From assembly GCF_001194135.2 (NCBI RefSeq), contig NC_068995.1:27593986-27630706 (forward strand): a stretch of 36,721 nucleotides of DNA, read 5' to 3'. Below the pieces are notes generated by a model that worked only from the letters and a program-made list of their open reading frames with translations, did no database searches and was not told the DNA's origin. The position numbers and the translations under genes were made by a program. Source of the DNA: Octopus bimaculoides. Its lineage: Eukaryota. Positions within the stretch are counted from its first letter, which is position 1. The number at the start of each line of letters is the position of its first letter. Below are positions 4,990-36,650 of this stretch, piece by piece.

Positions 4990-6858
4990 TGACAAAGATA
5001 AACCTCTGTACCTGCTCCATTATCTGGTGGTCAATGAGGAAACTGGGGATAGATGAGTAGTTAGTGAGAGCTGTGTAAGCCATGTATAGGGACACTGTCA
5101 GTAAGGTGAGGGTTGGCAACAAGTACAGTGAAGAATTCCGGGTAGAGGTGGGGGGTCCACCAAGGTTCAGTCCTCAGCCCCCTCCTATTTATCATAGTCC
5201 TCCAAGCAATAACACAGGAATTCAAGACGGGATGCCCCTGGGAGCTCCTCTATGCTGATGACCTTGCCCTAATTGCTGAGTCACTATCAGAACTAGAGAA
5301 GTTTCAGGTGTGGAAGCAAGGACTAGAATCGAAGGGCCTTAGAGTCAACCTAGCTAAAACCAAAGTTCTAATAAGTAGGAAGGTAGACAAGACACAAACC
5401 CCTGCTCAATCTGCAGAAAATGCGTAGGTAGAAACTCCGTAAGATGTACCCAGTGTAAGCTATGGACACATAAGAGGTGCAGCAATATCAATAGGAAGGC
5501 TAACTAGCAAGATAGTTTTTGTATGTGGCTCAGGAGCAATAAACACTGAGAATGTGCAGAATACAACCTTTACCACACTCCAGGGAGAAAAACTAGAATT
5601 AGTTGATAGCTTCCGCTACCTAGGTGACCAAGTTTGTAGCGGGGGAGGGTGCGCTGAAAGTTTGCTGCTAGAATAAGAATAGCCTGGGCAAAGTTTAGAG
5701 AGCTCTTACCTTGCTGGTGACAAAGGGTCTCTTGCTCAGAGTAAAAGGCAGACTGTATGACGCATGTGTATGAACAGCCATGCTACATGGCAGTGAAACA
5801 TGGGCCGTGACTGCTGAGGACATGCGTAAGCTCACAAGAAACAAAGCCAGTATGCTCTGGTGGATGTGTAATGTCAGTGTGCATACTCGACAGTGTGTAA
5901 GTACCTTGAGAGAAAAGTTAGACCTAAGAAGCATCAGTTGTGGTGTGCTAGAGAGACAACTGCATTGGTGTGGACATGTGTGGAAAGAAGGGATAAGGAT
6001 AGCTGTGTGAAAAAGGGCCACACCCTAGCAGTTGAGGGAACCTGTGGAAGAGGTAGACCCAAGAAGACCTGGGACGAGGTGGTGAAGCACAACCTTCGAA
6101 CTTTAGGCCTCACCGAGGCAATGACTAGTGACCGGGACCTTTGGAAATATGCAGTACGTGAGAAGACCCGGCAAGCCAAGTGAGAGCATAAGCTGGGACC
6201 TCTGCCAGATGTGTGGCCTGCTCACTTATCCATATCTTTACTTCATTGGACACTAAACTCTGCTTGCGAAGACCTGTTGAGGCAAGTGAATTTGAAATCT
6301 GAAATTGAACCGAATCCAACAACTGGCACCCATGCCAACCTCTCTTTCATTGGACACTAAACTCTGCTTGTGAAGAAATGTTGGGGCAAGTGAAATCAAA
6401 ATTGAACTATATCCAATGACTGGCACCGCGCCAGTGGAGCACTAACAGTACTGTCTAAGCGTGTTCATTGCCAGAGCAGCTGCCTGGCTTCCGTGCCAGT
6501 GGCCCGTAAATAGCACCATTTGAGTGTAATCATTACGAGCGCCACCTTTCAGCACTTGTGCTAGTGGCACGCTGGAAAATCATTCGAGCGAAGTCGTTGC
6601 CAGTGCCGCTGGACTGGCTCCTGTGCAGGTGGCACGTAAAATACACCTTTGGAACGAGACCGTTGCCAGTACTGTAGGTGGTACGTAAAAGCACCCACTA
6701 CACTCTCGGAGTGGTTGGCGTTAGGAAGGGCATCCAGCTGTAGAAACTCTGCCAGATCAGATTGGAGCCTGGTGCAGCCTTCTGACTTGCCAGTCCTCAG
6801 TCAAATCGTCCAACCCATGCTAGCATGGAAAGAGGACATTAAACGATGATGATGATGA
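4990..6858 (+). mobile_element. RTE-like LINE family A, 5'-truncated, with RT remnant, long repetitive 3' UTR and (GAT)n tail
   Basis: ELLYADDL motif at ~5245-5265; LHGSETWAVTAED; GRGRPKKTWDEVV. Frameshifts and stops are present. Confidence 0.9.
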
Positions 6859-11935: not shown

Positions 11936-13651
11936 TCTATGTGTATAGTTTTATACTGTATCTTCCGATTAGAAGGCGACAATAGATCAAAAGAAACGAA
12001 AACAAAGTCGTTAAACGAAAAACAAACGTAACAAATGTTGTGAAATTAGCAACAAAATGTGTAGCCAAGAATTATTGAATAATTATTTTCTGTGGCTATC
12101 GAGATTAAAATGCCCTGATTTAAAAATTAAGTGTTCCATGCCTTGTTTAGCTCCTGAAATTCAAAGAAGGAAATTTAATAGTTTGGTCGGAAACTTAATT
12201 TGATCAAAATAACTTCATGAGACTAAGCCCAAAATAACGAGAAACAAAATTGATTAAAGTCATTTTTATAATACATTGCATGAGATGGAAAAAAAAACCC
12301 ACAGAGATTGAGAGGAACTAAAAATACTTCCTTAATACTTTTAAACCAGACTAAGAAAATCTTATCACAAGATAACCTTTTCAATGTACTATAAAAAATA
12401 TAATTTAATACTGAAATGAAAATCATTAACAAGAATGCTTTGATCTCCATGTATGTGGAAGTTACGAGTCATTGGATAAACATTTTCGTAGCCAGTTCAA
12501 TTTATGGAATGGTCACGGCCAAGTATATATGATAAAGCTGCAATGTAACGTAAATTTTACAAGAAGAAAATTTATAAATGTTTATAATGATCGTACTGCA
12601 TTTTCTTCGTTTGTCAATTGTAAGTGGTGTTGCTTTATCGTGTAATAACGGAAATCTAACTGCAATTCTCGAATACGAATCAAGTTTCAATTTATATAAA
12701 ATATGGTTTCTTTCATTTTTTTTTTTTAGTATCTTTAATTTACTGCATTTGACACCAGATCTTTGGTACTAGTATGCTTTTACACCTCACCCAACAGATT
12801 TGCTTTTCACCTAAACAATTCCGCTTTTTATACTTTCGTTTTATACCCACCTACCTGGTAAAATATTCTATGAAAATAATCATCAAATACATTCAAATCT
12901 AAAATTATCGTGAAGTTATTAATACCCATTTGAAATAAAATGGCAACATTATTCTTTAGCTATACAAATAAAATAAACTACCATGGAAATTCAGAATATT
13001 CGTCAAAGAAATTATGCAAATGATACAAACATAAATGTCACTAAAAACTCCTTACATATAGTTCGGTTCGAGGTTTAAAAGCGTGTTAAATTTTGTACCG
13101 TTATATTTATTGAAGCAAATAATTGCAGAAGACGAAATCGTTTATCTCTTAATGGATATCAAAATGTAAACTGTGAAACTGAAAATGAAATGACATACAT
13201 GAATGGTAACATACTGGGAAAGCGCCAATATCAGTTGAAATCATGTCATTATCCTTTATGAAAACTTCTAGTTCAAAGAAAGAAAAAATAAAATTTGAAA
13301 CTTTTTTTTTTTGGTGCACATACAATCTATTAAATTTGAATTTTTTTTTTCCAACTATAGGCATCGTATTATTTTAATAAGTTATGAAAATAAACATTGC
13401 AGAGAACTAACTAACGAGAAAGCCTCTATGCGATCGCTTGATTTGTTAGAAATAGTAGCCGATTTTCCCTCAAATTATGCCCTGCAATCTTGAAAATAAA
13501 GACAGGATTGGATAATGCAGTCCTAAATACTCATTAAAAAAAAACGAAATGATCATAGGTGGAACAGCTTTGATCGTTTGATCGGGGGGTGGGGGTAAAC
13601 TTGATGCTAACAATACATAACAAAAACATCGACAGAAAAATCCATATAAAT

Positions 13652-13657
13652 ACGTAC
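13652..13657 (-). other. 5' splice donor (AAG|GTACGT), phase 0
   Basis: Plus-strand tacgtacctt at 13651-13660 reads AAG|GTACGTA on the minus strand, exactly after codon 138 of the ORF. Confidence 0.75.
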
Positions 13658-14071
13658 CTTGACAAGATCTTTTTGATTATCCTTAAGAGTTGCTGAATCC
13701 ATTCCGGCTGGAAGTTCTTCCCTACTAGTTTCCAAACCAGAAGGGCTTGGATTAGAACTTGAAACCGAACCTTCATGATCGGGTGAGCCACTCGGTGCTA
13801 TAGTAGTTAGAGTTGTCGTACCACAAATGACACTAGCACCGCAACTAATATTTTGAATGGTGCTTCCAGTAATGCTAGAAGTAGCAGCACTATTTGGATT
13901 ACTAGTACTGTTACCACCAACAACACTTAAATTACTGCAATAACCAGCACCGCCACTGCTGTGACCGGCAAGCACTGTGCTTACTCCTGTGTAATCAGCT
14001 AACCTTTCTGCGGCAGCAGCATTTTCGCGGGATTTGCTTCCGTCTCGAGATTTTCCTTTTCTTGAACTCAT
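13658..14071 (-). CDS. First coding exon of an unidentified host gene (Ser/Thr/Gly-rich, likely disordered N-terminus)
   Basis: MSSRKGKSRDGSKSRENAAAAERL...EELPAGMDSATLKDNQKDLVK: 414 nt open, with higher GC than the flanks. The start context is ttaaacaATGA (A at -3). It ends at a strong donor and has no TE similarity. Confidence 0.8.
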
Positions 14072-16630: not shown

Positions 16631-16810
16631 TTTTATCTTTTACTTGTTTCATTCATTTAACTGCAGCCATGCTGGGGAACTACCTTAAGAGTTTTTAAAG
16701 CTATCAGTCTCTTTTGCTGAACCATTAAGTTACAGGGACATAAATACACCAACAACGATTGACAAACAGTGATTAGAGACAAACACAAACACACACACAC
16801 ACACATAGAT
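16631..16810 (-). mobile_element. tRNA-derived SINE, 3' part
   Basis: tttacttgtttcattcatttaactgcagccatgctgggg...ctaagttacaggg-like block of the same family as 7176. Confidence 0.8.
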
Positions 16811-16815
16811 ATATA

Positions 16816-16856
<41 letters not shown>

Positions 16857-17478
16857 NNNNNNNNNNNNNNNNNNNNNNNNNNNNNNNNNNNNNNNNNNNN
16901 NNNNNNNNNNNNNNNNNNNNNNNNNNNNNNNNNNNNNNNNNNNNNNNNNNNNNNNNNNNNNNNNNNNNNNNNNNNNNNNNNNNNNNNNNNNNNNNNNNNN
17001 NNNNNNNNNNNNNNNNNNNNNNNNNNNNNNNNNNNNNNNNNNNNNNNNNNNNNNNNNNNNNNNNNNNNNNNNNNNNNNNNNNNNNNNNNNNNNNNNNNNN
17101 NNNNNNNNNNNNNNNNNNNNNNNNNNNNNNNNNNNNNNNNNNNNNNNNNNNNNNNNNNNNNNNNNNNNNNNNNNNNNNNNNNNNNNNNNNNNNNNNNNNN
17201 NNNNNNNNNNNNNNNNNNNNNNNNNNNNNNNNNNNNNNNNNNNNNNNNNNNNNNNNNNNNNNNNNNNNNNNNNNNNNNNNNNNNNNNNNNNNNNNNNNNN
17301 NNNNNNNNNNNNNNNNNNNNNNNNNNNNNNNNNNNNNNNNNNNNNNNNNNNNNNNNNNNNNNNNNNNNNNNNNNNNNNNNNNNNNNNNNNNNNNNNNNNN
17401 NNNNNNNNNNNNNNNNNNNNNNNNNNNNNNNNNNNNNNNNNNNNNNNNNNNNNNNNNNNNNNNNNNNNNNNNNNNNNA
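16857..17478. other. Assembly gap (N run)
   Basis: N characters. Other gaps lie at about 18353-18507, 19936-20474, 27513-28298, 31810-32458, 34520-34529 and 34791-34800. Confidence 1.
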
Positions 17479-18150
17479 TTAACATCCTGAAAGATTGCAT
17501 TTCCCTCTGGAAACAGTACCACAACCATAGGATGAATTTGATCAGATAAAATGCTTAAATAGTCTTGACTATTAAATCTGTCATGAAAGGAAACCATTGG
17601 GCCAGCGGATTTCCAAGATATAGCCCCTCCAACCAGATCATCACAGTTCCTCCTTCATGTTGGAAGAGGGCAGTCTGGGTCAAATGCTTCTTTTGGCTGT
17701 CTCCACACATATACTTAGCCAGTGGTCAGAAATAAGGTAAAGGATGACTCATCTGTGAAAATAACATACTTCCACTGCTCTAGGGACCAATTCTGTGGGT
17801 TTTTACTCCACTCTAAACACTTTGCAACATTTGTTTTTGAAAGCAATGGTTTTCTGATTGCAGCCCTATCATGAAATCCAGCTTTGTGCAGCTCCTGGCA
17901 AAAGGTTTTTGTGGAAACTGGGTTCTTGTGGTGGTCATTAGACTCTGCAGTAATATTGGGAGTTGTACTTTTGTGATCCTTTCTAACAATTCGTATAAGA
18001 GTCCAATGGTCCCTATCTGAAAGTTTTGGTTTTCTTCCAGAGTTTTGTTTCAACAAAGACTGTCATTACTTTCTTGATGCACCAAACATTTTGGCTGTTT
18101 TCATTATGCCTGCCATAAGAGCACCAACAATTTGACCTCTTTGAAGCAAT
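17479..18150 (-). mobile_element. Tc1-like transposase remnant (N-terminal HTH to second catalytic D), DD36E type
   Basis: FQRGQIVGA, NSGRKPKLSDRD, VIFTDESSFTLF, VYVWRQPKEAFDPDC and FPEGNAIFQD. Truncated by the gap. Confidence 0.9.
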
Positions 18151-19113: not shown

Positions 19114-19703
19114 CCCATTTTTTTTTACCTGACCAAATATTTTTTCTAACTTGACTAGATAGACCTTATTTTCAAGCTACAAAAAGTTTATTTGTATTGT
19201 TTTAAAGTTGCAATAGTATATAATTTGCATTGACATCATGAAGAATACTTCTTTGCATTCTTTGATAACAAACAGTATACATTCCTTGCAGAAGCAGAAG
19301 CCATGTAAAATATATTTACATGCTGGCACAATTACACAAGAGCAGTTTAGAATCTGAACTTCTCATATATAATATTAGACTTGTGAAAAACCTCACAAAC
19401 AGAAAGTTGTAGTATTCAAGGAAAGTTGTAGCATTCAGAAAGTTGTAGTATTAAGAAAGTTGAAGTATTCAAGGAAAGTCATTATAAGGAATCCAAAACA
19501 GCAAAATAATTTATATATGTAAATGCATCTATCAATATACAGCTGTGTGGGTGTACTGAAACACACACGCTCTTGTATGTTTTAAATATATATATATATA
19601 TATATGTATAGTTGTATGCTGTTAACTTAATGTGACAGTCCCACGAAGGGAATAATACTACTGCTTTTAGCCCTAGGAAGCAGTACCACTTCCTGTCGGC
19701 CTT

Positions 19704-19935
19704 GGCACATTTCCTGTGTCCTTGTGTTTACAAGGGGGAGACAAGCACCTTCACTCAGCTAAGCCTGCATCCAGAGACTAGTTTCTGAGTCTTTGCTCAT
19801 CATCAGTCTGGAGTAGCATGGTCTGCTAGTTGGTGAAGATGAGCAAAAACTCAGAAACTAGTCTCTGGATGCAGGCTTCGCTGGGTGGAGGTGCTTGTCT
19901 CCCCCTTGTAAACATAAGGACACAAGAAATGTGTC
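19704..19935. repeat. 102-bp inverted repeat (8 mismatches) with a 28-nt spacer
   Basis: 19704-19805 is the reverse complement of 19834-19935. The right arm is cut by the gap. Confidence 0.95.
19770..19812 (-). ncRNA. Minimal type-I hammerhead ribozyme motif (HHR-1)
   Basis: The minus strand reads TCCAGA-CTGATGA-TGAG-CAAAGA-CTCA-GAAAC-TA-GTC-TCTGGA. This gives a 6-bp stem I, a complete catalytic core, a 4-bp stem II, a palindromic ACTAGT stem III and a GUC cleavage triplet. Confidence 0.85.
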
Positions 19936-20474
19936 NNNNNNNNNNNNNNNNNNNNNNNNNNNNNNNNNNNNNNNNNNNNNNNNNNNNNNNNNNNNNNNNN
20001 NNNNNNNNNNNNNNNNNNNNNNNNNNNNNNNNNNNNNNNNNNNNNNNNNNNNNNNNNNNNNNNNNNNNNNNNNNNNNNNNNNNNNNNNNNNNNNNNNNNN
20101 NNNNNNNNNNNNNNNNNNNNNNNNNNNNNNNNNNNNNNNNNNNNNNNNNNNNNNNNNNNNNNNNNNNNNNNNNNNNNNNNNNNNNNNNNNNNNNNNNNNN
20201 NNNNNNNNNNNNNNNNNNNNNNNNNNNNNNNNNNNNNNNNNNNNNNNNNNNNNNNNNNNNNNNNNNNNNNNNNNNNNNNNNNNNNNNNNNNNNNNNNNNN
20301 NNNNNNNNNNNNNNNNNNNNNNNNNNNNNNNNNNNNNNNNNNNNNNNNNNNNNNNNNNNNNNNNNNNNNNNNNNNNNNNNNNNNNNNNNNNNNNNNNNNN
20401 NNNNNNNNNNNNNNNNNNNNNNNNNNNNNNNNNNNNNNNNNNNNNNNNNNNNNNNNNNNNNNNNNNNNNNNNNN

Positions 20475-20504
<30 letters not shown>

Positions 20505-20506
<2 letters not shown>

Positions 20507-21795
20507 CTCTTTTACTTGTTTTACCCATGCGGATGTGCTCATGCTGCAGCACTACCATGGTCTTTCTGACTTCCTCAGTCTGGATGTTTCACATCACCAC
20601 ACCTGTATGCGCCTTTGTCCCAGTTGTTGGTACATTTGGTGTATAAAGGAATTTGATTCCACTGCCCTCATCTGTACCTTATGTCAGTCTGTTGGTTCAT
20701 GCGGTATTGTGGAGAGGAGAATGTCTAGTTCCTTTTTGAAGACATCTACTTCCACCTTATGCAAATTTCTTCATTTTTGTGGAAGGACATTGAAGAGCTG
20801 TGGGCCTTTGAACCCTAGACTATTGCAGTACCTGGTCCTGAAATTAGATGGAGTGGATGGTATTTTTGGTACAAATGGTGGCCAGTTCTGGCATTTGTAT
20901 AACACTCAATGCCAAAGTTAGATACTAGCCCTTCTAGGATTTTGCATATGTATATTGTTGCATTTCTCTCACACTTTAGCTCCAGGGAGTAAAGCTGTGC
21001 TTTTCTCAGCCTATCCCTGTAGCTCATCCGTTATACTGTTTCAATCTTTTTAATGTAGTGGCATTGGACTGCATCAAGCTCCACTATTAGTTTGGCACAA
21101 TGTGGTGACCATAACTGGGAGTAGTAGTCCAGGTGGCTGAGAACAAAGGTTCTCCACAGGGTCAACATAGTTTCTTGGTCTCTTGTCTTGAATGACCTCA
21201 GTATCCATCCTGCCAGCTGTCTGCACTTTATTGCCATCTTGCTAATGTACATATAAAATGATGTGTCATTGCACGCACAGATCCCCAAGTCTTTTAGTGC
21301 CTGTGACTCTGGGATTGTACTGCCTTCGGGTCCTGTATATGTAGATTGTACTGTATTTGTGAGTTGATAGTGCAGGGCTTGAAATTTCCCAGCATTAAAC
21401 TGCATGTTATTTCAGCCCACTTGTATATTGAATTTAGGTCCCACTTGTGATATCATCTTGGTTTTTTTTATTGCCTGTGATAATTTTGTACCATCGGCAT
21501 AGCTAGTGACAATGGCTGTTCAAGTGACTGTGAGTATGTCTAAGAGGGCTATTATGAACAGTAATTTCTCTAGAACAGTTTCCTGGGAAACACCACTTAG
21601 GATTTGAGTTTCAACAGAAAGGGTGCCATTGGCTGCAACTACCTGACTTCTGTTTTTAAGGAAGTCATGCAGCCACTCTCCCAGTTTACCAGCAATGCCA
21701 AGGTCTTGTAGCTTATAACTTATCATGCCATGATCTACCTTATGAAATGCCTTTGCAAAGTCAAGGTATTTCACACTGACATCTGAATGGTCAAG
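20505..21795 (-). mobile_element. CR1-like LINE, RT to 3' tail
   Basis: YLDFAKAFHKVDHG, MQFNAGKFQAL, LSHLDYYSQLWSP and SYRDRLRKAQLYSLE. The tail reads ...aaacaagtaaaagagt on the minus strand. Confidence 0.85.
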
Positions 21796-22106
21796 CAGCT
21801 GTTTCAAAATAGTGATGATGGTGTAGGATATCGACTCCTTACTTGTTTTTCCAAAATGCACCATAAATGTTCGATGATATTGAGATCTGGGGACTGTGGT
21901 GGCCAGATAAGATGTTCAACTTCACTAGAATGTTCCTTGTGCCATTCACTAAGAAATTTAGCTGTGTGAATTGGTGCATTATCATCCTGAAAGATTGCAT
22001 TTCCCTCTGGAAACAGTACCGCAACCATAGGATGAATTTGATCAGATAAAATGCTTAAATAGTCTTGACCATTAATTCTGCCATGAAGGGAAACCATTGG
22101 GCCAGA
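21796..22106 (-). mobile_element. Tc1-like transposase remnant, catalytic C-terminal part (DD36E)
   Basis: FQDDNAPIHTAKFLSEWHKEHSSEVEHLIWPPQSPDLNIIEHLW. 21983-22106 is highly similar to 17479-17603. Confidence 0.9.
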
Positions 22107-22270
22107 GGATAGTGGAGTTAGTTCAAAGGGATATATAATCCTGGCAGTTACTGTATTTCCTCTTAAATCAATTTTATATGCTGGGTAACTACAGTAAGCC
22201 TTTGGTGATACCCCAGTGAATCTTATTATTAACTCAGGTATCACTAAAGGTTTACTGTGATTAACCAGTG

Positions 22271-33838: not shown

Positions 33839-36650
33839 GAACGTATAATGACTCTACAGTTGCACTTGAAAGGTAGGCGGTTTGCTACTCTAATAAGTGC
33901 CTATGCACCTACTTTGATTAGCTGTGATGAAGATAAAACAATCTTTTATACCCAGCTGAGAGCCATATTTAGAAAAATCCCCAATTCTGATAAAATCATT
34001 CTACTGGGTTTTTTTAATGCCAGGGCTGGAACAGACTGGCAAACATGGAACTCTCTAGGATGTTTTGGAGTAGGGAAAATGAATAGCAATGGTCTCATGC
34101 TACTGGAGCTCTGCAAAGAACATGGATTTTACATAGCAAGCACTCATTTTATGCACAAAGGTGATTACACAACAACGTGGATGCATCCAAGGTCCAAAGT
34201 TTGGCATTGCTGGATTATGTCATCATCCGCAAGCGTGACATCTATGACATTTGTAATGTCAAGTCCTTTCATGGATCAGAATGCTGGACAGACCACAGTC
34301 TGGTGCGAGCAAAGTTCCGAATGATGATTAGAGTGAAAGAGAGAAGAGGACCAATCAGCATTCCTCGGTGTCTAAATGTCCACAAGGTATATGATGATGG
34401 GGTTAAGAAAGAGATTCAGACTCGCTTGTCCAGCATTGAAAATACTGCAGCATGGGAAGATTTTCGAGACCTGGTTCTTCAATGTGCAGCTGAAACACTG
34501 GGATATGTTAATGCTAGACNNNNNNNNNNAGCTGAAACACTGGGATATGTTAGTGCTAGACACAGAGACTAGTTTGATGAAAATGATGCTGAAGTTCAGC
34601 GACTATTGGTGGTAAAGCGCCATGCTCACAGTGTGTTGCTACACAGAGAACTAACTACTGTGCAGCAAAGTCTTGCACTTACCCACTATAGCAGTGTAAA
34701 ATCACTACTGCAGCGATCTCTCAGGAAGATGCAGAACACTTGGTGGGAGGATCTTGCTCATGATGTTCAGGCTGCTGCTGATGCAAATGANNNNNNNNNN
34801 TGCAGAACACTTGGTGGGAGGATCTTGCTCATGATGTTCAGGCTGCTGCTGATGCAAATGACAACAAGAAGCTTTACCATCTTATGAAGCGAACTTATGG
34901 ACCTAAGAGTTCCACATCAGCTCCTTTGCTTTCCAAGGAGACTTCCACTCTGTTTACTAAATCAACAGAAATCACAGGTCACTGGATCGAACACTTCTCT
35001 GAACTCCTAAACCATGAATCAGTTGTGGATGAAAAAGTGATTGATGCTATGCAACAAAGACCTATCATTGGCTCCTTAGACTCTTCGCCCTCAATAGATG
35101 AAGTAATGACATCAATAAGTAAATTGAATCTTGGTAGAGCGCCTGGAAAGGATGGAATTTGTGCTGAGGTCTTGCGATTTGGTGGTAATTACATCACACA
35201 GTCCCTTCATGAACTTATTAGTGCAGTCTGGAGGGATGGTGCAATCCATAAGGACTGGAAATATGCAATTATTATTCCTCTATATACAGGAAAAGGAGCC
35301 AGAACAAAGTGTGGTAACTACAGGGGTATTGCTCTACTACCAGCTGCTGGCAAGATTCTGGCAAATATTCTTCTTACCCGTCTGAAAGGGTGTCTCATAA
35401 ATGATGTCCTATCTGAATCTCAATGTGGCTTCCGATCTGGTAGAGGGACAATGGATATGATTTTCACAGCAAGACAGATGCAGGAGAAGTGCTATGAGCA
35501 GAATATGGATCTTGTCCAGGTATTCATTGATTTAACAAAGGCCTTTGATACAGTAAATAGGGCCTTTCTATGGAAAATACATGGCAGACTTGGATGTCTG
35601 GATCACTTTGTATCTATAATTAAATCATTTCATAATGGGATGGTGGCTTGGGTCAATGTTGGTGGTGGCATGGCGGGACCCATTCCTGTAGAGAATGGTG
35701 TCAAGTAGGGTGACATCCTTGCCCCAACTCTCTTTTCTTTGTGCTTTGATGCTACTTTTAATCAGGCTTTTGCTAAGGTTAGCTCTCTGGGAATATATGT
35801 CAGGTATCGATCTTCTGGCCGCCTCTTTAATTGTTGCCGATTTGCTGCCAATTCAAAGGTTCTCCAGTCTATTATTCATGACCTCCTTTATGCAGATGAC
35901 TGTGACTTAGTCACTCATACAGTGGATGACATGCAAATACTCATGAATTGCATTTCTGCTTCTTGCAAGGCATTTGGACTCAGCATTAGCCTGGACAAGA
36001 CTGTTGTAATGTTCCAGCCTGCACCAGGAAATCCACATGTGAAACCAGCTATCTTAGTTGAAGGAAAAATTGTGAAGGTAGTGGACAAGATTGTCTAACT
36101 GGGCAGCAGACTCAGCCGTTCTTGCTCCCTGGATGAGGAAATTTCTTTCAGGTTGCAAAGAGCAACTAATTCCTTCCAGTCTTTTTAGTCTCAAAAATTC
36201 CAGACACACAGGTCCTGAGGACAGCTGATATCTTGAGTATAGAGGTGATGGTGCACAAGCACCAGTTATGTTGGACTGGACACCTTATTAGAATGAAGTA
36301 TAGCAAGATTCCTAAGCAGATGCTGTATGGAGAACTTGTGAATGGAAGGAGACTCTGGCAGAAACCAAGGATTTGTGATATGCAGGACACTGACAAGGAG
36401 AACAATGCCTGTCATCGCCACAGATGGAGGGGGCAGGTAAAGTAGGGGATCAACAATTTTGAGAGAGCACGTATCTAGCATGAAGAACTTAAGCGAGCTG
36501 CGCAAAAGCTCAAACCTCGTATAGTGAATGGGGAAAGTTTGGTCTGCACTGTTTGCAGTCGTGTATGCTTGTCAAGAGCAGGGCTCATTAGCAACCAACA
36601 TAGCCACAAATGCAAAATATAAGTTAGTCCTAAAGCACACAATGTTCCTG
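33839..36650 (+). mobile_element. RTE family B (BovB-like) near full-length pseudo-ORF: AP endonuclease, RT, zinc finger
   Basis: Endonuclease: ERIMTL, LISAYAPT, DKIILLGxFNARxG, LDYVI, WTDH. RT: SQCGFRSGRGTMDM, FIDLTKAFDTVNR, GVK*GDILAPTLF, DLLYADD. Frameshifts and an internal deletion at ~36185 are present. Confidence 0.92.

What the first reader, a model, noticed from the sequence alone, without database searches (positions are those of the whole stretch)
19770..19812. Intact minimal hammerhead ribozyme with a palindromic stem III (dimer type) and a non-canonical U10.1-A11.1 pair
Seen: every core nucleotide is present (CUGAUGA, GAAA, GUC), with a perfect 6-bp stem I and 4-bp stem II. The predicted cleavage is between 19776 and 19775 on the minus strand. 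Stem III is AC-UA-GU, a self-complementary ACUAGU. Known: such minimal hammerheads (newt satellite 2, Penelope-like elements) cleave as dimers. The stem II closing pair is U-A instead of the usual G-C. Within the aligned part of the motif (U4 onward), the inverted sister copy differs only at the variable N7 position and in loop II, as expected of a constrained RNA fold. No protein-coding remnant is visible nearby, so this may be a short non-autonomous ribozyme retroelement (retrozyme/mini-PLE-like) family (inference).
Basis: partly seen in the sequence, partly recalled or inferred. Interest (0 to 1): 0.85.

Follow-up and report, generated by a model that had tools for sequence, protein, structure and literature searches.

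The report
Hammerhead ribozyme in octopus retroelement insertion
The sequence is a real hammerhead self-cleaving RNA motif, carried by a short non-coding mobile element that inserted, as two head-to-head truncated copies, into a TA microsatellite of the Octopus bimaculoides genome; it is a new example of a well-known kind and this copy is probably inert.

Summary
Minus strand 19812-19770 reads UCCAGA-CUGAUGA-UGAG-CAAAGA-CUCA-GAAA-CUAGUC-UCUGGA, with cleavage after C 19776. Random sequence of the same composition gave 0 such motifs in 2000 windows.

It is not a "minimal" hammerhead. It has the canonical metazoan type-I layout: UAC bulge, 6-bp helix I, 4-bp helix II, CAAANA loop II and a palindromic helix III. 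A model built from 34 independent hammerheads of that layout scores it 39.6 bits. No Rfam hammerhead model reports it.

The U10.1-A11.1 pair is unusual: 60 G-C, 3 G-U and no U-A among 63 comparable natural hammerheads.

The window is Octopus bimaculoides. The orthologous O. sinensis site has an uninterrupted (TA)n/(TATG)n microsatellite where the window has 19619-20474. So the inverted repeat is a lineage-specific insertion of at most about 860 bp without an ORF. This matches Penelope-like-element and retrozyme behaviour.

The sister arm starts at U4 and cannot cleave. The arms show no extra conservation in the ribozyme (2/36 against 5/64 mismatches).

A second hammerhead family, with U3-A8 and A10.1-U11.1, sits in a (TA)n-flanked 345-nt element in O. 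vulgaris.

Verdict: a new member of a known kind, and this copy is probably dead on arrival. Self-cleavage and copy number are untested.

The parts
19770..19812 (-). Complete type-I hammerhead. Helix I 5' strand 19812-19807, core CUGAUGA 19806-19800, helix II with loop CAAAGA 19799-19786, GAAA 19785-19782, palindrome ACUAGU 19782-19777, C17 at 19776 (cleavage 19776|19775), helix I 3' strand 19775-19770.
   Evidence: only descriptor hit; 0/2000 random windows at this stringency; 39.6 bits, E about 2e-8 with model R1.
19813..19822 (-). Sequence 5' of helix I (CCAUGCUAC). It contains the UAC (19815-19813) that occupies the position of the helix-I bulge in canonical metazoan type-I hammerheads. 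UGC (19818-19816) can pair with GCA (19768-19766) as a short distal helix I.
   Evidence: Same UAC position in the N79/Sm1 sequence printed in PMC12550524, in 63 metagenome hammerheads and in the O. vulgaris copy. The distal pairing is my reading of the sequence.
19620..19769 (-). Body of the left (minus-strand) copy, from downstream of the ribozyme to its 3' end. It abuts the (TA)n/(TATG)-like microsatellite.
   Evidence: 19706-19769 is repeated in the right arm. 19620-19705 has no visible partner because the right arm runs into the assembly gap.
19806..19833 (.). Junction between the two arms. It holds the rest of the left copy's ribozyme and a small palindrome, TAGCA-TGGTC-TGCTA (19814-19828). 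This is where both copies are 5'-truncated.
19834..19935 (+). Right (plus-strand) inverted copy. A ribozyme remnant from U4 to the helix I 3' strand (19834-19869) lacks C3 and the helix I 5' strand. The body follows, up to the assembly gap.
   Evidence: (partial match to model positions 11-42, 14.9 bits).
19936..20474 (.). Assembly gap (539 N) inside the insertion. The rest of the right copy, and anything else inserted, is unknown.
19583..19618 (.). Left target flank: (TA)n followed by TGTATAGTTGTATG. It is collinear with the O. sinensis microsatellite.
20475..20504 (.). Right target flank: (TG)n then TATACTC. Alignment to O. sinensis resumes at 20477.

Best explanation
The locus is a lineage-specific insertion in Octopus bimaculoides of a short, non-coding, hammerhead-bearing retroelement. 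The element is of the kind mobilised by Penelope-like elements (PLEs): either a non-LTR-retrozyme-like non-autonomous element or the 3'/pLTR end of a PLE.

Shown:
- The insertion landed in a (TA)n microsatellite.
- It consists of two head-to-head, 5'-truncated copies whose 3' ends face outward.

Inferred:
- Both copies arose in one insertion event. Either reverse transcription was primed on both cleaved target strands, as shown in vitro for the Anolis PLE PAc, or the cDNA snapped back at the small central palindrome.
- In the parent element the canonical type-I hammerhead processes multimeric transcripts. Helix III is only A15.1-U16.1 closed by the palindromic CUAG, so two ribozymes must pair ACUAGU with ACUAGU to form a 6-bp helix III. 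Each then cleaves after C17.
- The resulting unit-length RNA carries 5'-OH and 2',3'-cyclic phosphate ends. A host tRNA ligase can circularise it, and a PLE reverse transcriptase can copy it.
- At this locus the ribozyme is most likely a fossil. It has no tandem partner. The partner arm lacks C3 and half of helix I. Any read-through transcript would fold into a roughly 100-bp hairpin that buries the ribozyme. U10.1 removes the purine N7 of the A9/G10.1 metal site.
For: - Motif and chance.
- Canonical type-I membership: same UAC / 6 bp / 4 bp / CAAANA layout as N79/Sm1. Covariance model R1, built from 34 of them, ranks the window motif first in 93 kb of octopus DNA (39.6 bits).
- Species: the exon at 13607-14071(-) is 100% identical to O. 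bimaculoides XP_014768498.1.
- Insertion: window 19454-19605 aligns to L003 5247-5096 and window 20477-21706 to L003 5068-3827. O. sinensis has an unbroken (TA)n(TATG)n at the site.
- No ORF in the at most about 860 bp inserted.
- The neighbouring Tc1 and LINE remnants are shared with O. sinensis, so they predate the insertion.
- Inverted arms are 93% identical, JC distance 0.073. That is similar to the 6-10% flank divergence between the species.
- A second octopus element in O. vulgaris L004 has a hammerhead about 170 nt from a (TA)n-abutting 3' end.
- A divergent inverted hammerhead pair also occurs in an unrelated metagenome contig, L023.
- Literature: PLE insertions are 5'-truncated, often have an adjacent inverted truncated copy, carry hammerheads in pLTRs near the 3' end and prefer (TA)n (PMC8557442). 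PAc cleaves AT-rich DNA and extends both strands (PMC11167929). Canonical type-I hammerheads reside in non-LTR retrozymes, and weak-helix-III ones need dimers (PMC7229834). Retrozymes are PLE-derived and have dispersed monomers (bioRxiv 10.64898/2026.07.22.740005). PLEs are abundant and recently active in Octopus (PMC13282606).
- Hairpin sequestration: -179 kcal/mol.
- Intermolecular helix III: -6.2 kcal/mol.
Against: - No other copy of this exact family was found: none in the window, in 57 kb of O. sinensis and O. vulgaris DNA, in JGI metagenomes, or as pseudo-ORFs in the protein collections.
- No PLE RT/GIY-YIG ORF sharing this 3' end could be sought, so the link to PLE machinery rests on architecture and literature.
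- Rfam hammerhead models report nothing, even at E <= 10 on 73 nt.
- The 193-nt unit is not unusually structured (z = -0.88), unlike typical retrozyme RNAs.
- The MFE folds of the 136-nt and 216-nt contexts do not form the hammerhead.
- Insertion is not polarised against deletion by an outgroup.
- The gap of 539 N hides part of the insertion.
- Model R1's training set was collected with a pattern taken from this motif, so its E-value is optimistic.
Confidence: 0.75

Rival explanations
1. This locus is an active non-autonomous retrozyme. It is transcribed, self-cleaves as a dimer and yields unit-length or circular RNA that retrotransposes.
For: The core and helices are intact. The architecture is the canonical type-I one typical of retrozymes (PMC7229834). 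The palindromic helix III could dimerise in trans with transcripts of other copies. Axolotl HHR_Amex2 cleaves despite a U-U at the base of helix II.
Against: There is one complete ribozyme, not a tandem array, so two cleavages cannot release a unit. The partner arm is inverted and lacks C3 and the helix I 5' strand. Read-through gives a -179 kcal/mol hairpin. The copy lacks whatever lies upstream of the ribozyme in a full unit. The ribozyme is no better conserved than the rest of the arms.
Confidence: 0.08
2. The functional unit is the inverted repeat itself. It is a hairpin-RNA gene, a source of siRNA, piRNA or miRNA-like small RNAs or an A-to-I editing substrate, and the hammerhead is an incidental passenger.
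For: The hairpin is roughly 100 bp and 93% paired, at -179 kcal/mol. Sub-threshold matches to miRNA precursor models span 19760-19879.
Against: The Rfam scores are 43-45 bits against gathering scores of 90-99. They only reflect the hairpin shape. The element is absent from O. sinensis, so there is no conservation. The arms have drifted 7% without compensatory changes. Inverted copies are a routine by-product of PLE-type insertion (PMC8557442).
Confidence: 0.07
3. It is the 5'-truncated 3' end of an autonomous Penelope-like element, not of a separate non-autonomous family. This is a variant of the best explanation rather than a true rival.
For: The hammerhead lies about 155 nt from the 3' end. 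The copies are 5'-truncated and inverted, and the target is (TA)n (PMC8557442). Thirty recently active Penelope families are reported in O. vulgaris.
Against: Metazoan PLE hammerheads are described as atypical or minimal: helix II of 7-8 bp, a bulged nucleotide after A9, and a short helix I (PMC4209133). This one has the canonical 6-bp and 4-bp layout that the same authors assign to retrozymes (PMC7229834). The O. vulgaris analogue is a complete 345-nt (TA)n-to-(TA)n element with no ORF.
Confidence: 0.3
4. It is a chance match or an assembly artefact.
For: The repeat borders an assembly gap. Rfam reports no hammerhead.
Against: 0/2000 random windows gave such a motif, and 0/600 random 90-kb sets did. 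Model R1 scores it 39.6 bits. Arms that differ at 7% are not a collapsed or duplicated assembly artefact.
Confidence: 0.02

Closest known systems
Canonical metazoan type-I hammerheads of non-LTR retrozymes (newt/axolotl satellite 2 HHR_Amex1, Schistosoma Sm-alpha/Sm1, coral and mussel retrozymes; Cervera & de la Pena 2020, PMC7229834)
   Same: Type-I topology, 6-bp helix I preceded by UAC, 4-bp helix II, 6-nt CAAANA loop II, and a helix III reduced to one base pair plus a palindromic tetraloop as in HHR_Amex1. It resides in a short, AT-rich, non-coding repeat.
   Different: The 10.1-11.1 pair is U-A instead of G-C (0/63). The copy here is inverted and 5'-truncated rather than a head-to-tail array. 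The 193-nt unit is not unusually self-paired. RNA circles are untested.
Penelope-like elements and their pLTR hammerheads (Cervera & de la Pena 2014, PMC4209133; Craig et al. 2021, PMC8557442; PAc, PMC11167929)
   Same: A hammerhead near the 3' end, 5'-truncated copies with an adjacent inverted copy, insertion into a (TA)n or AT-rich target, and a palindromic 15.x-16.x region.
   Different: The insertion has no RT/GIY-YIG ORF. The ribozyme lacks the PLE 'min-HHR' hallmarks (long helix II, extra nucleotide after A9, short helix I). The 'tail' signature cannot be assessed from one copy.
Second octopus hammerhead element (O. vulgaris OX597815.1, L004 5296-5640 minus strand)
   Same: Identical spacing from N3 to C17 (31 nt). 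It shares the UAC upstream, a 4-bp helix II with a 6-nt C-A-rich loop, a palindromic hexamer helix III, a W-W pair at 10.1-11.1, a body of about 170 nt ending at (TA)n, and no ORF.
   Different: It has the U3-A8 core covariant, A10.1-U11.1, a 5-bp helix I and ACAUGU in helix III. It is a single direct copy with 140 nt upstream, and it is strongly self-paired (z = -5.45). Outside the ribozyme the similarity to the window element is not significant.

Membership tests
Hammerhead ribozyme, type I | Conserved core C3 U4 G5 A6 N7 G8 A9 / G12 A13 A14 / A15.1-U16.1 / H17 | tested here: met
   All positions are present on the minus strand 19806-19776.
Hammerhead ribozyme, type I | Three helices around the core, with helix I open-ended | tested here: met
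   Helix I has 6 bp from the flanking strands. Helix II has 4 bp and a loop. Helix III is capped (A-U plus CUAG).
Hammerhead ribozyme, type I | G10.1-C11.1 pair at the base of helix II | tested here: not met
   It is U10.1-A11.1 in both arms. In 63 comparable natural hammerheads the pair is G-C 60 times, G-U 3 times and U-A never. The O. vulgaris relative has A-U.
Hammerhead ribozyme, type I | Match to the curated Rfam hammerhead covariance models at gathering score | tested here: not met
   There were no hits at gathering thresholds. No hammerhead family was listed at E <= 10 on 341 nt or 73 nt.
Hammerhead ribozyme, type I | Self-cleavage 3' of H17 | not testable with these tools
   This needs in vitro transcription of monomer and dimer constructs.
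Canonical metazoan type-I hammerhead (Sm1/newt/retrozyme class) | 6-bp helix I with a UAC-containing bulge, 4-bp helix II, CAAANA-type loop II (tertiary-contact elements) and a short palindromic helix III | tested here: met
   The layout is the same as the N79/Sm1 sequence printed in PMC12550524. Model R1, built from 34 metagenome hammerheads of this layout, gives 39.6 bits over the full length. Caveat: the training set was fetched with a pattern derived from this motif.
Non-LTR retrozyme | Head-to-tail tandem repeats of about 170-400 bp, each with a type-I hammerhead | tested here: not met
   There is one complete ribozyme. The only other copy is inverted and truncated, and no tandem copy exists in the window. 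Dispersed monomers of retrozyme families are known, so the family may still qualify.
Non-LTR retrozyme | Non-coding, low GC, mobile | tested here: met
   No ORF. GC is about 0.43-0.45. The orthologous site in O. sinensis is empty.
Non-LTR retrozyme | Expressed as linear and circular unit-length RNA | not testable with these tools
   No transcriptome data were accessible.
Penelope-like element insertion | ORF with a telomerase-like RT and a GIY-YIG endonuclease | tested here: not met
   The insertion is at most about 860 bp, including the 539-N gap, and has no ORF. The nearby RVT_1 and DDE_3 remnants are shared with O. sinensis.
Penelope-like element insertion | 5'-truncated copies in partial tandem and/or with an adjacent inverted copy; hammerhead in the repeated terminal region | tested here: met
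   The inverted arms are 19706-19805 and 19834-19933, with 3' ends outward and a hammerhead at the inner end.
Penelope-like element insertion | Insertion into a (TA)n or AT-rich target | tested here: met
   O. sinensis has a continuous (TA)n(TATG)n at the site. The O. vulgaris element is also flanked by (TA)n.
Penelope-like element insertion | 30-40-bp 'tail' extension at one end; homology to an autonomous PLE of the same genome | not testable with these tools
   This needs many copies and the O. bimaculoides genome. Only one copy was available.
microRNA / hairpin-RNA gene | Match to a curated precursor model; conservation | tested here: not met
   The best scores are 43-45 bits against gathering scores of 90-99. 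The locus is absent from O. sinensis.

The most novel reading that the evidence does not exclude
Octopus genomes may carry many families of short, (TA)n-targeting, hammerhead-bearing non-autonomous elements that PLEs mobilise. Their ribozymes would have replaced the near-universal G10.1-C11.1 pair by U-A or A-U, sometimes together with the U3-A8 core covariant, and would still cleave. Such elements could account for part of the very large 'unclassified SINE' fraction reported for octopus (893 recently active families in O. vulgaris, PMC13282606). Two full hammerheads in 90.6 kb of sampled octopus DNA would extrapolate to tens of thousands per genome.
Probability: 0.2. Interest if true: 0.5.

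Novelty: new member of a known kind. Interest (0 to 1): 0.27.

Why it matters
Hammerheads in Penelope-like elements and retrozymes are well documented across metazoans, so this one changes no concept.

It adds three modest things.
- It is a cephalopod example. None of the octopus repeat papers I could search mentions ribozymes.
- It is a clean before-and-after pair: an empty site in O. sinensis and a filled site in O. bimaculoides. This shows that such an element inserts into a (TA)n microsatellite as a head-to-head pair of truncated copies.
- Two octopus families have a non-G-C 10.1-11.1 pair. If they are active, they would be natural data on how far the A9/G10.1 metal site can vary.

If these elements are as frequent as the small sample suggests, they would be relevant to annotating the large unclassified repeat fraction of octopus genomes.

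Tried and rejected
- Rfam at gathering thresholds on the whole window, and E-value mode on 341 nt and 73 nt, reported no hammerhead family. The only hits were sub-threshold miRNA-hairpin and C/D-box matches, driven by the inverted repeat and by UGAUGA. I rejected these as identities.
- I looked for other copies of the family in several ways. All were negative:
  - blastn within the window;
  - blastn against O. sinensis and O. vulgaris loci;
  - the exact 19-mer CTCAGAAACTAGTCTCTGG in JGI metagenomes;
  - a 68-aa pseudo-translation in the 5.8-billion-protein index;
  - a 50-aa pseudo-ORF against 1.84 billion representatives. Its only 'strong' hit, P0126, is a translated 68-bp minisatellite in an unrelated genome with no hammerhead, so it is spurious.
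- I tested homology between the window element and the O. vulgaris element outside the ribozyme. The local alignment score was 21 against a shuffle mean of 18.4, p about 0.2. This is not significant, so I do not claim one family.
- I tested for an unusually stable fold of the 193-nt unit. z = -0.88, not significant.
- Exact look-ups of ten window ORFs and of the host exon found nothing on record. O. sinensis isoform X2 was not on record either. Isoform X1, found through the cluster listing, gave the orthologous locus.
- I looked for PLE ORFs next to canonical hammerheads in the metagenome loci. Only L024 has an RVT_1 ORF, upstream of a hammerhead with U-U at 10.1-11.1. The other ORFs are unrelated: IMPDH, DNA_pol_B_2 and a tyrosine recombinase.
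- I searched the literature for quantitative effects of 10.1-11.1 substitutions. Nothing usable turned up in the open library.

Full report
**Observation.**
The minus strand from 19812 to 19770 reads UCCAGA CUGAUGA UGAG CAAAGA CUCA GAAA CUAGUC UCUGGA. Every hammerhead core position is present:
- Helix I is a perfect 6 bp formed by the two flanking strands, which makes this type-I topology.
- Helix II is 4 bp and starts with U10.1-A11.1.
- A15.1 to U16.1 is the palindrome ACUAGU.

A descriptor scan of both strands finds this as the only hammerhead in the window. In 2000 first-order Markov random windows of the same composition, two had any hit under relaxed rules. None had helix I >=6 bp together with helix II >=4 bp. 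The motif is real and not a chance match.

**What kind of hammerhead.**
It is not the 'minimal' variant described for metazoan Penelope-like elements, which has a long helix II, an extra nucleotide after A9 and a short helix I (PMC4209133). It has the canonical metazoan layout instead:
- UAC sits immediately 5' of a 6-bp helix I.
- Helix II is 4 bp.
- Loop II is 6 nt and reads CAAAGA.
- Helix III is reduced to one pair closed by a palindromic tetraloop.

The engineered Schistosoma Sm1 derivative N79, as printed in PMC12550524, reads GGUAC AUCCAG CUGAUGA GUCC CAAAUA GGAC GAAAC. That is the same layout.

I scanned the metagenome collection with TAC-N6-CTGANGA-N4-CAAANA-N4-GAAAC. Of the 126 matches, 63 have a full helix II and at least 5 bp of helix I, and 56 of those have a palindromic A15.1-U16.1 segment.

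I built a covariance model from 34 of them. It ranks the window motif first in 93 kb of octopus DNA, at 39.6 bits and a rough E-value of 2e-8 over the full length. The fetching pattern was taken from this motif, so that E-value is optimistic. The test still shows that the architecture is a recurrent natural family and that the octopus motif fits all three helices.

Against this, the curated Rfam hammerhead models report nothing, even at E <= 10 on a 73-nt slice.

**The 10.1-11.1 pair.**
U-A is atypical. Among the 63 complete metagenome hammerheads the pair is G-C in 60 and G-U in 3. PMC4209133 calls G10.1-C11.1 highly conserved.

From general knowledge of the ribozyme, G10.1 N7 and the A9 phosphate form a divalent-metal site, so a pyrimidine at 10.1 should weaken catalysis. 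It need not abolish it. Axolotl HHR_Amex2 has a U-U mismatch at the base of helix II and still cleaves, better as a dimer (PMC7229834).

**Monomer or dimer.**
As a monomer the hammerhead fold without helix III has -8.8 kcal/mol, against an MFE of -10.6 for a competing fold. Helix III cannot close. Two copies can pair ACUAGU with ACUAGU, at -6.2 kcal/mol.

This is the HHR_Amex1/newt situation. There, monomers cleave poorly (6% in one hour) and dimers cleave well.

**The sister copy.**
The arms 19706-19805 and 19834-19933 are 93% complementary with 28 nt between them. The plus-strand copy begins at U4 and lacks C3 and the 5' strand of helix I, so it cannot be a ribozyme. Model R1 matches it only partially, at 14.9 bits.

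The two arms differ at 7 of 100 positions: 2 of 36 in the ribozyme part (N7 and loop II) and 5 of 64 outside it. Fisher's test gives p = 1.0.

The junction contains a small palindrome, TAGCA-TGGTC-TGCTA (19814-19828). Both copies are truncated at about the same point.

**Context and the decisive comparison.**
- The window is Octopus bimaculoides. The exon at 13607-14071(-) is 100% identical to XP_014768498.1 and 99% identical to O. sinensis LOC115220518.
- The O. sinensis locus (L003, CM016874.1) is collinear with window 1335-25067 at about 86-94% identity in the collinear blocks.
- Window 19454-19605 aligns to L003 5247-5096, and window 20477-21706 aligns to L003 5068-3827.
- Between these, O. 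sinensis has only an unbroken (TA)n(TATG)n microsatellite.
- So everything from about 19619 to 20474, which is both arms plus the 539-N gap, is present in O. bimaculoides and absent from O. sinensis.
- It has no ORF.
- The Tc1/mariner and LINE RT remnants within 2 kb are shared by both species, so they are unrelated to it.
- The arm-to-arm JC distance of 0.073 is comparable to the flank divergence between the species. This fits an insertion soon after the split.

There is no outgroup, so a precise deletion in O. sinensis is not formally excluded. Insertion of a ribozyme-bearing repeat into a microsatellite is far more plausible.

**Related elements.**
A random 20.7-kb O. vulgaris locus (L004) contains a second hammerhead at 5467-5512(-). 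It reads UAC-G-CUGCA UUGAUAA AGGG CAACAA CUCU GAAA CAUGUC UGCAG. It has the U3-A8 core covariant that PMC4209133 reports in Schistosoma, A10.1-U11.1, and the palindrome ACAUGU. R1 scores it 27.8 bits.

It lies in a 345-nt non-coding element flanked by (TA)n on both sides, and the element folds far better than shuffles (z = -5.45).

A stringent dimer-type descriptor finds these two motifs in 90.6 kb of octopus DNA and none in 600 random sets of that size. Outside the ribozyme the two elements are not significantly similar, so I treat them as separate families with the same architecture.

An unrelated metagenome contig (L023) shows the same divergent, head-to-head pair of hammerhead-bearing arms: 203 bp at 97.5% identity.

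**Mechanism (mostly inferred).**
The published behaviour of Penelope-like elements matches every structural feature here:
- Insertions are strongly 5'-truncated.
- An inverted truncated copy is often adjacent.
- Hammerheads lie near the 3' end.
- (TA)n is a preferred target (PMC8557442).
- The Anolis PLE protein cleaves AT-rich DNA and extends both strands (PMC11167929).

Canonical type-I hammerheads are assigned to non-LTR retrozymes (PMC7229834). A 2026 preprint derives retrozymes from PLE pLTRs and shows they leave dispersed monomers. PLEs are abundant and recently active in Octopus (PMC13282606).

I therefore read the locus as one PLE-type insertion event of a short hammerhead-bearing RNA. 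Either priming on both target strands or snap-back at the central palindrome copied it into two head-to-head truncated copies.

In the parent element the ribozyme would act as a dimer on multimeric transcripts. This would give unit-length RNA that can be circularised and reverse-transcribed.

Here it is most likely a fossil, for four reasons:
- It has no tandem partner.
- Its partner arm is dead.
- A read-through transcript folds into a -179 kcal/mol hairpin.
- U10.1 is predicted to weaken the ribozyme.

**Rivals.**
- An active retrozyme at this locus is unlikely for the reasons just given.
- A hairpin small-RNA gene is not excluded. It has no support beyond shape: Rfam miRNA scores are 43-45 bits against gathering scores of 90-99, and the locus is not conserved.
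- Whether the source was an autonomous PLE's 3' end or a separate non-autonomous family cannot be settled without the genome. The canonical ribozyme layout and the ORF-less O. vulgaris analogue favour the non-autonomous reading.
- Chance and assembly artefact are excluded by the statistics and by the 7% arm divergence.

**Limits.**
- No other copy of this exact family was found with the collections available.
- Self-cleavage, expression and copy number are untested.
- Part of the insertion lies in an assembly gap.

Noticed in passing
L004:5296-5640 (O. vulgaris OX597815.1, minus strand); ribozyme at 5467-5512: This is a second octopus hammerhead family. It has the U3-A8 core covariant, A10.1-U11.1 and the palindrome ACAUGU. 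It sits in a 345-nt non-coding element flanked by (TA)n on both sides that is strongly self-paired (z = -5.45).
   Followed up: partly
L003:24440-24560 (O. sinensis, minus strand, inside an intron of LOC115220518): Two adjacent units of about 65 nt each carry CUGAUGAG-ACCC-AAUAAG-GUUC-(G)AAA. Model R1 gives a marginal 16.6 bits (E about 0.05). It may be a decayed hammerhead repeat with G10.1-C11.1, or a chance match.
   Followed up: no
L023:1-615 (metagenome contig Ga0126343_10117488): Two canonical type-I hammerheads lie on opposite strands in 203-bp inverted arms (97.5% identical, about 209 nt apart) and point outward. The geometry is the same as in the window.
   Followed up: partly
L024 (metagenome contig C688J18823_10053840), minus strand: A 479-aa ORF with an RVT_1 domain is followed about 1.26 kb downstream by a hammerhead of the same layout. 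That hammerhead has U-U at 10.1-11.1 and the palindrome ACGCGU. It is possibly a Penelope-like element.
   Followed up: partly
window 31482-32738, and the 10-N gaps at 34520-34529 and 34791-34800: The same sequence appears on both sides of these assembly gaps. Examples are the ELHKSATCSSSLKLQNNYNGRRRY... string on either side of 31810-32458, and AETLGYV.AR on either side of 34520-34529. This looks like scaffolding or gap-closing redundancy rather than biology.
   Followed up: no
window 19401-19479: A minisatellite of 17-19-nt units (AGAAAGTTGTAGTATTCAAGGAAAGT) lies just left of the insertion. The overlapping alignments to L003 5222-5247 suggest a copy-number difference from O. sinensis.
   Followed up: no
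window 13607-14071 (-): This is the first coding exon of O. bimaculoides LOC106867943, an uncharacterised serine/threonine-rich protein. The hammerhead insertion lies about 5.7 kb upstream of its start codon.
   Followed up: partly
window 16773-18056 (-), 21031-22244 (-), 33146-36098 (+): The window holds Tc1/mariner remnants (HTH_Tnp_Tc3_2, DDE_3) and LINE-type RT remnants (RVT_1). Those flanking the insertion are shared with O. sinensis. The 34884-35708 RT is 86% identical to an O. vulgaris paralogue.
   Followed up: partly
window 19760-19879: In the 136-nt and 216-nt contexts, the MFE fold pairs the helix II region of the ribozyme (GAUGAGCAAAGACUCAG) with downstream CUGAGUGAAGGUGCUUGUC instead of forming the hammerhead. 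This could be a regulatory alternative fold or a coincidence.
   Followed up: no
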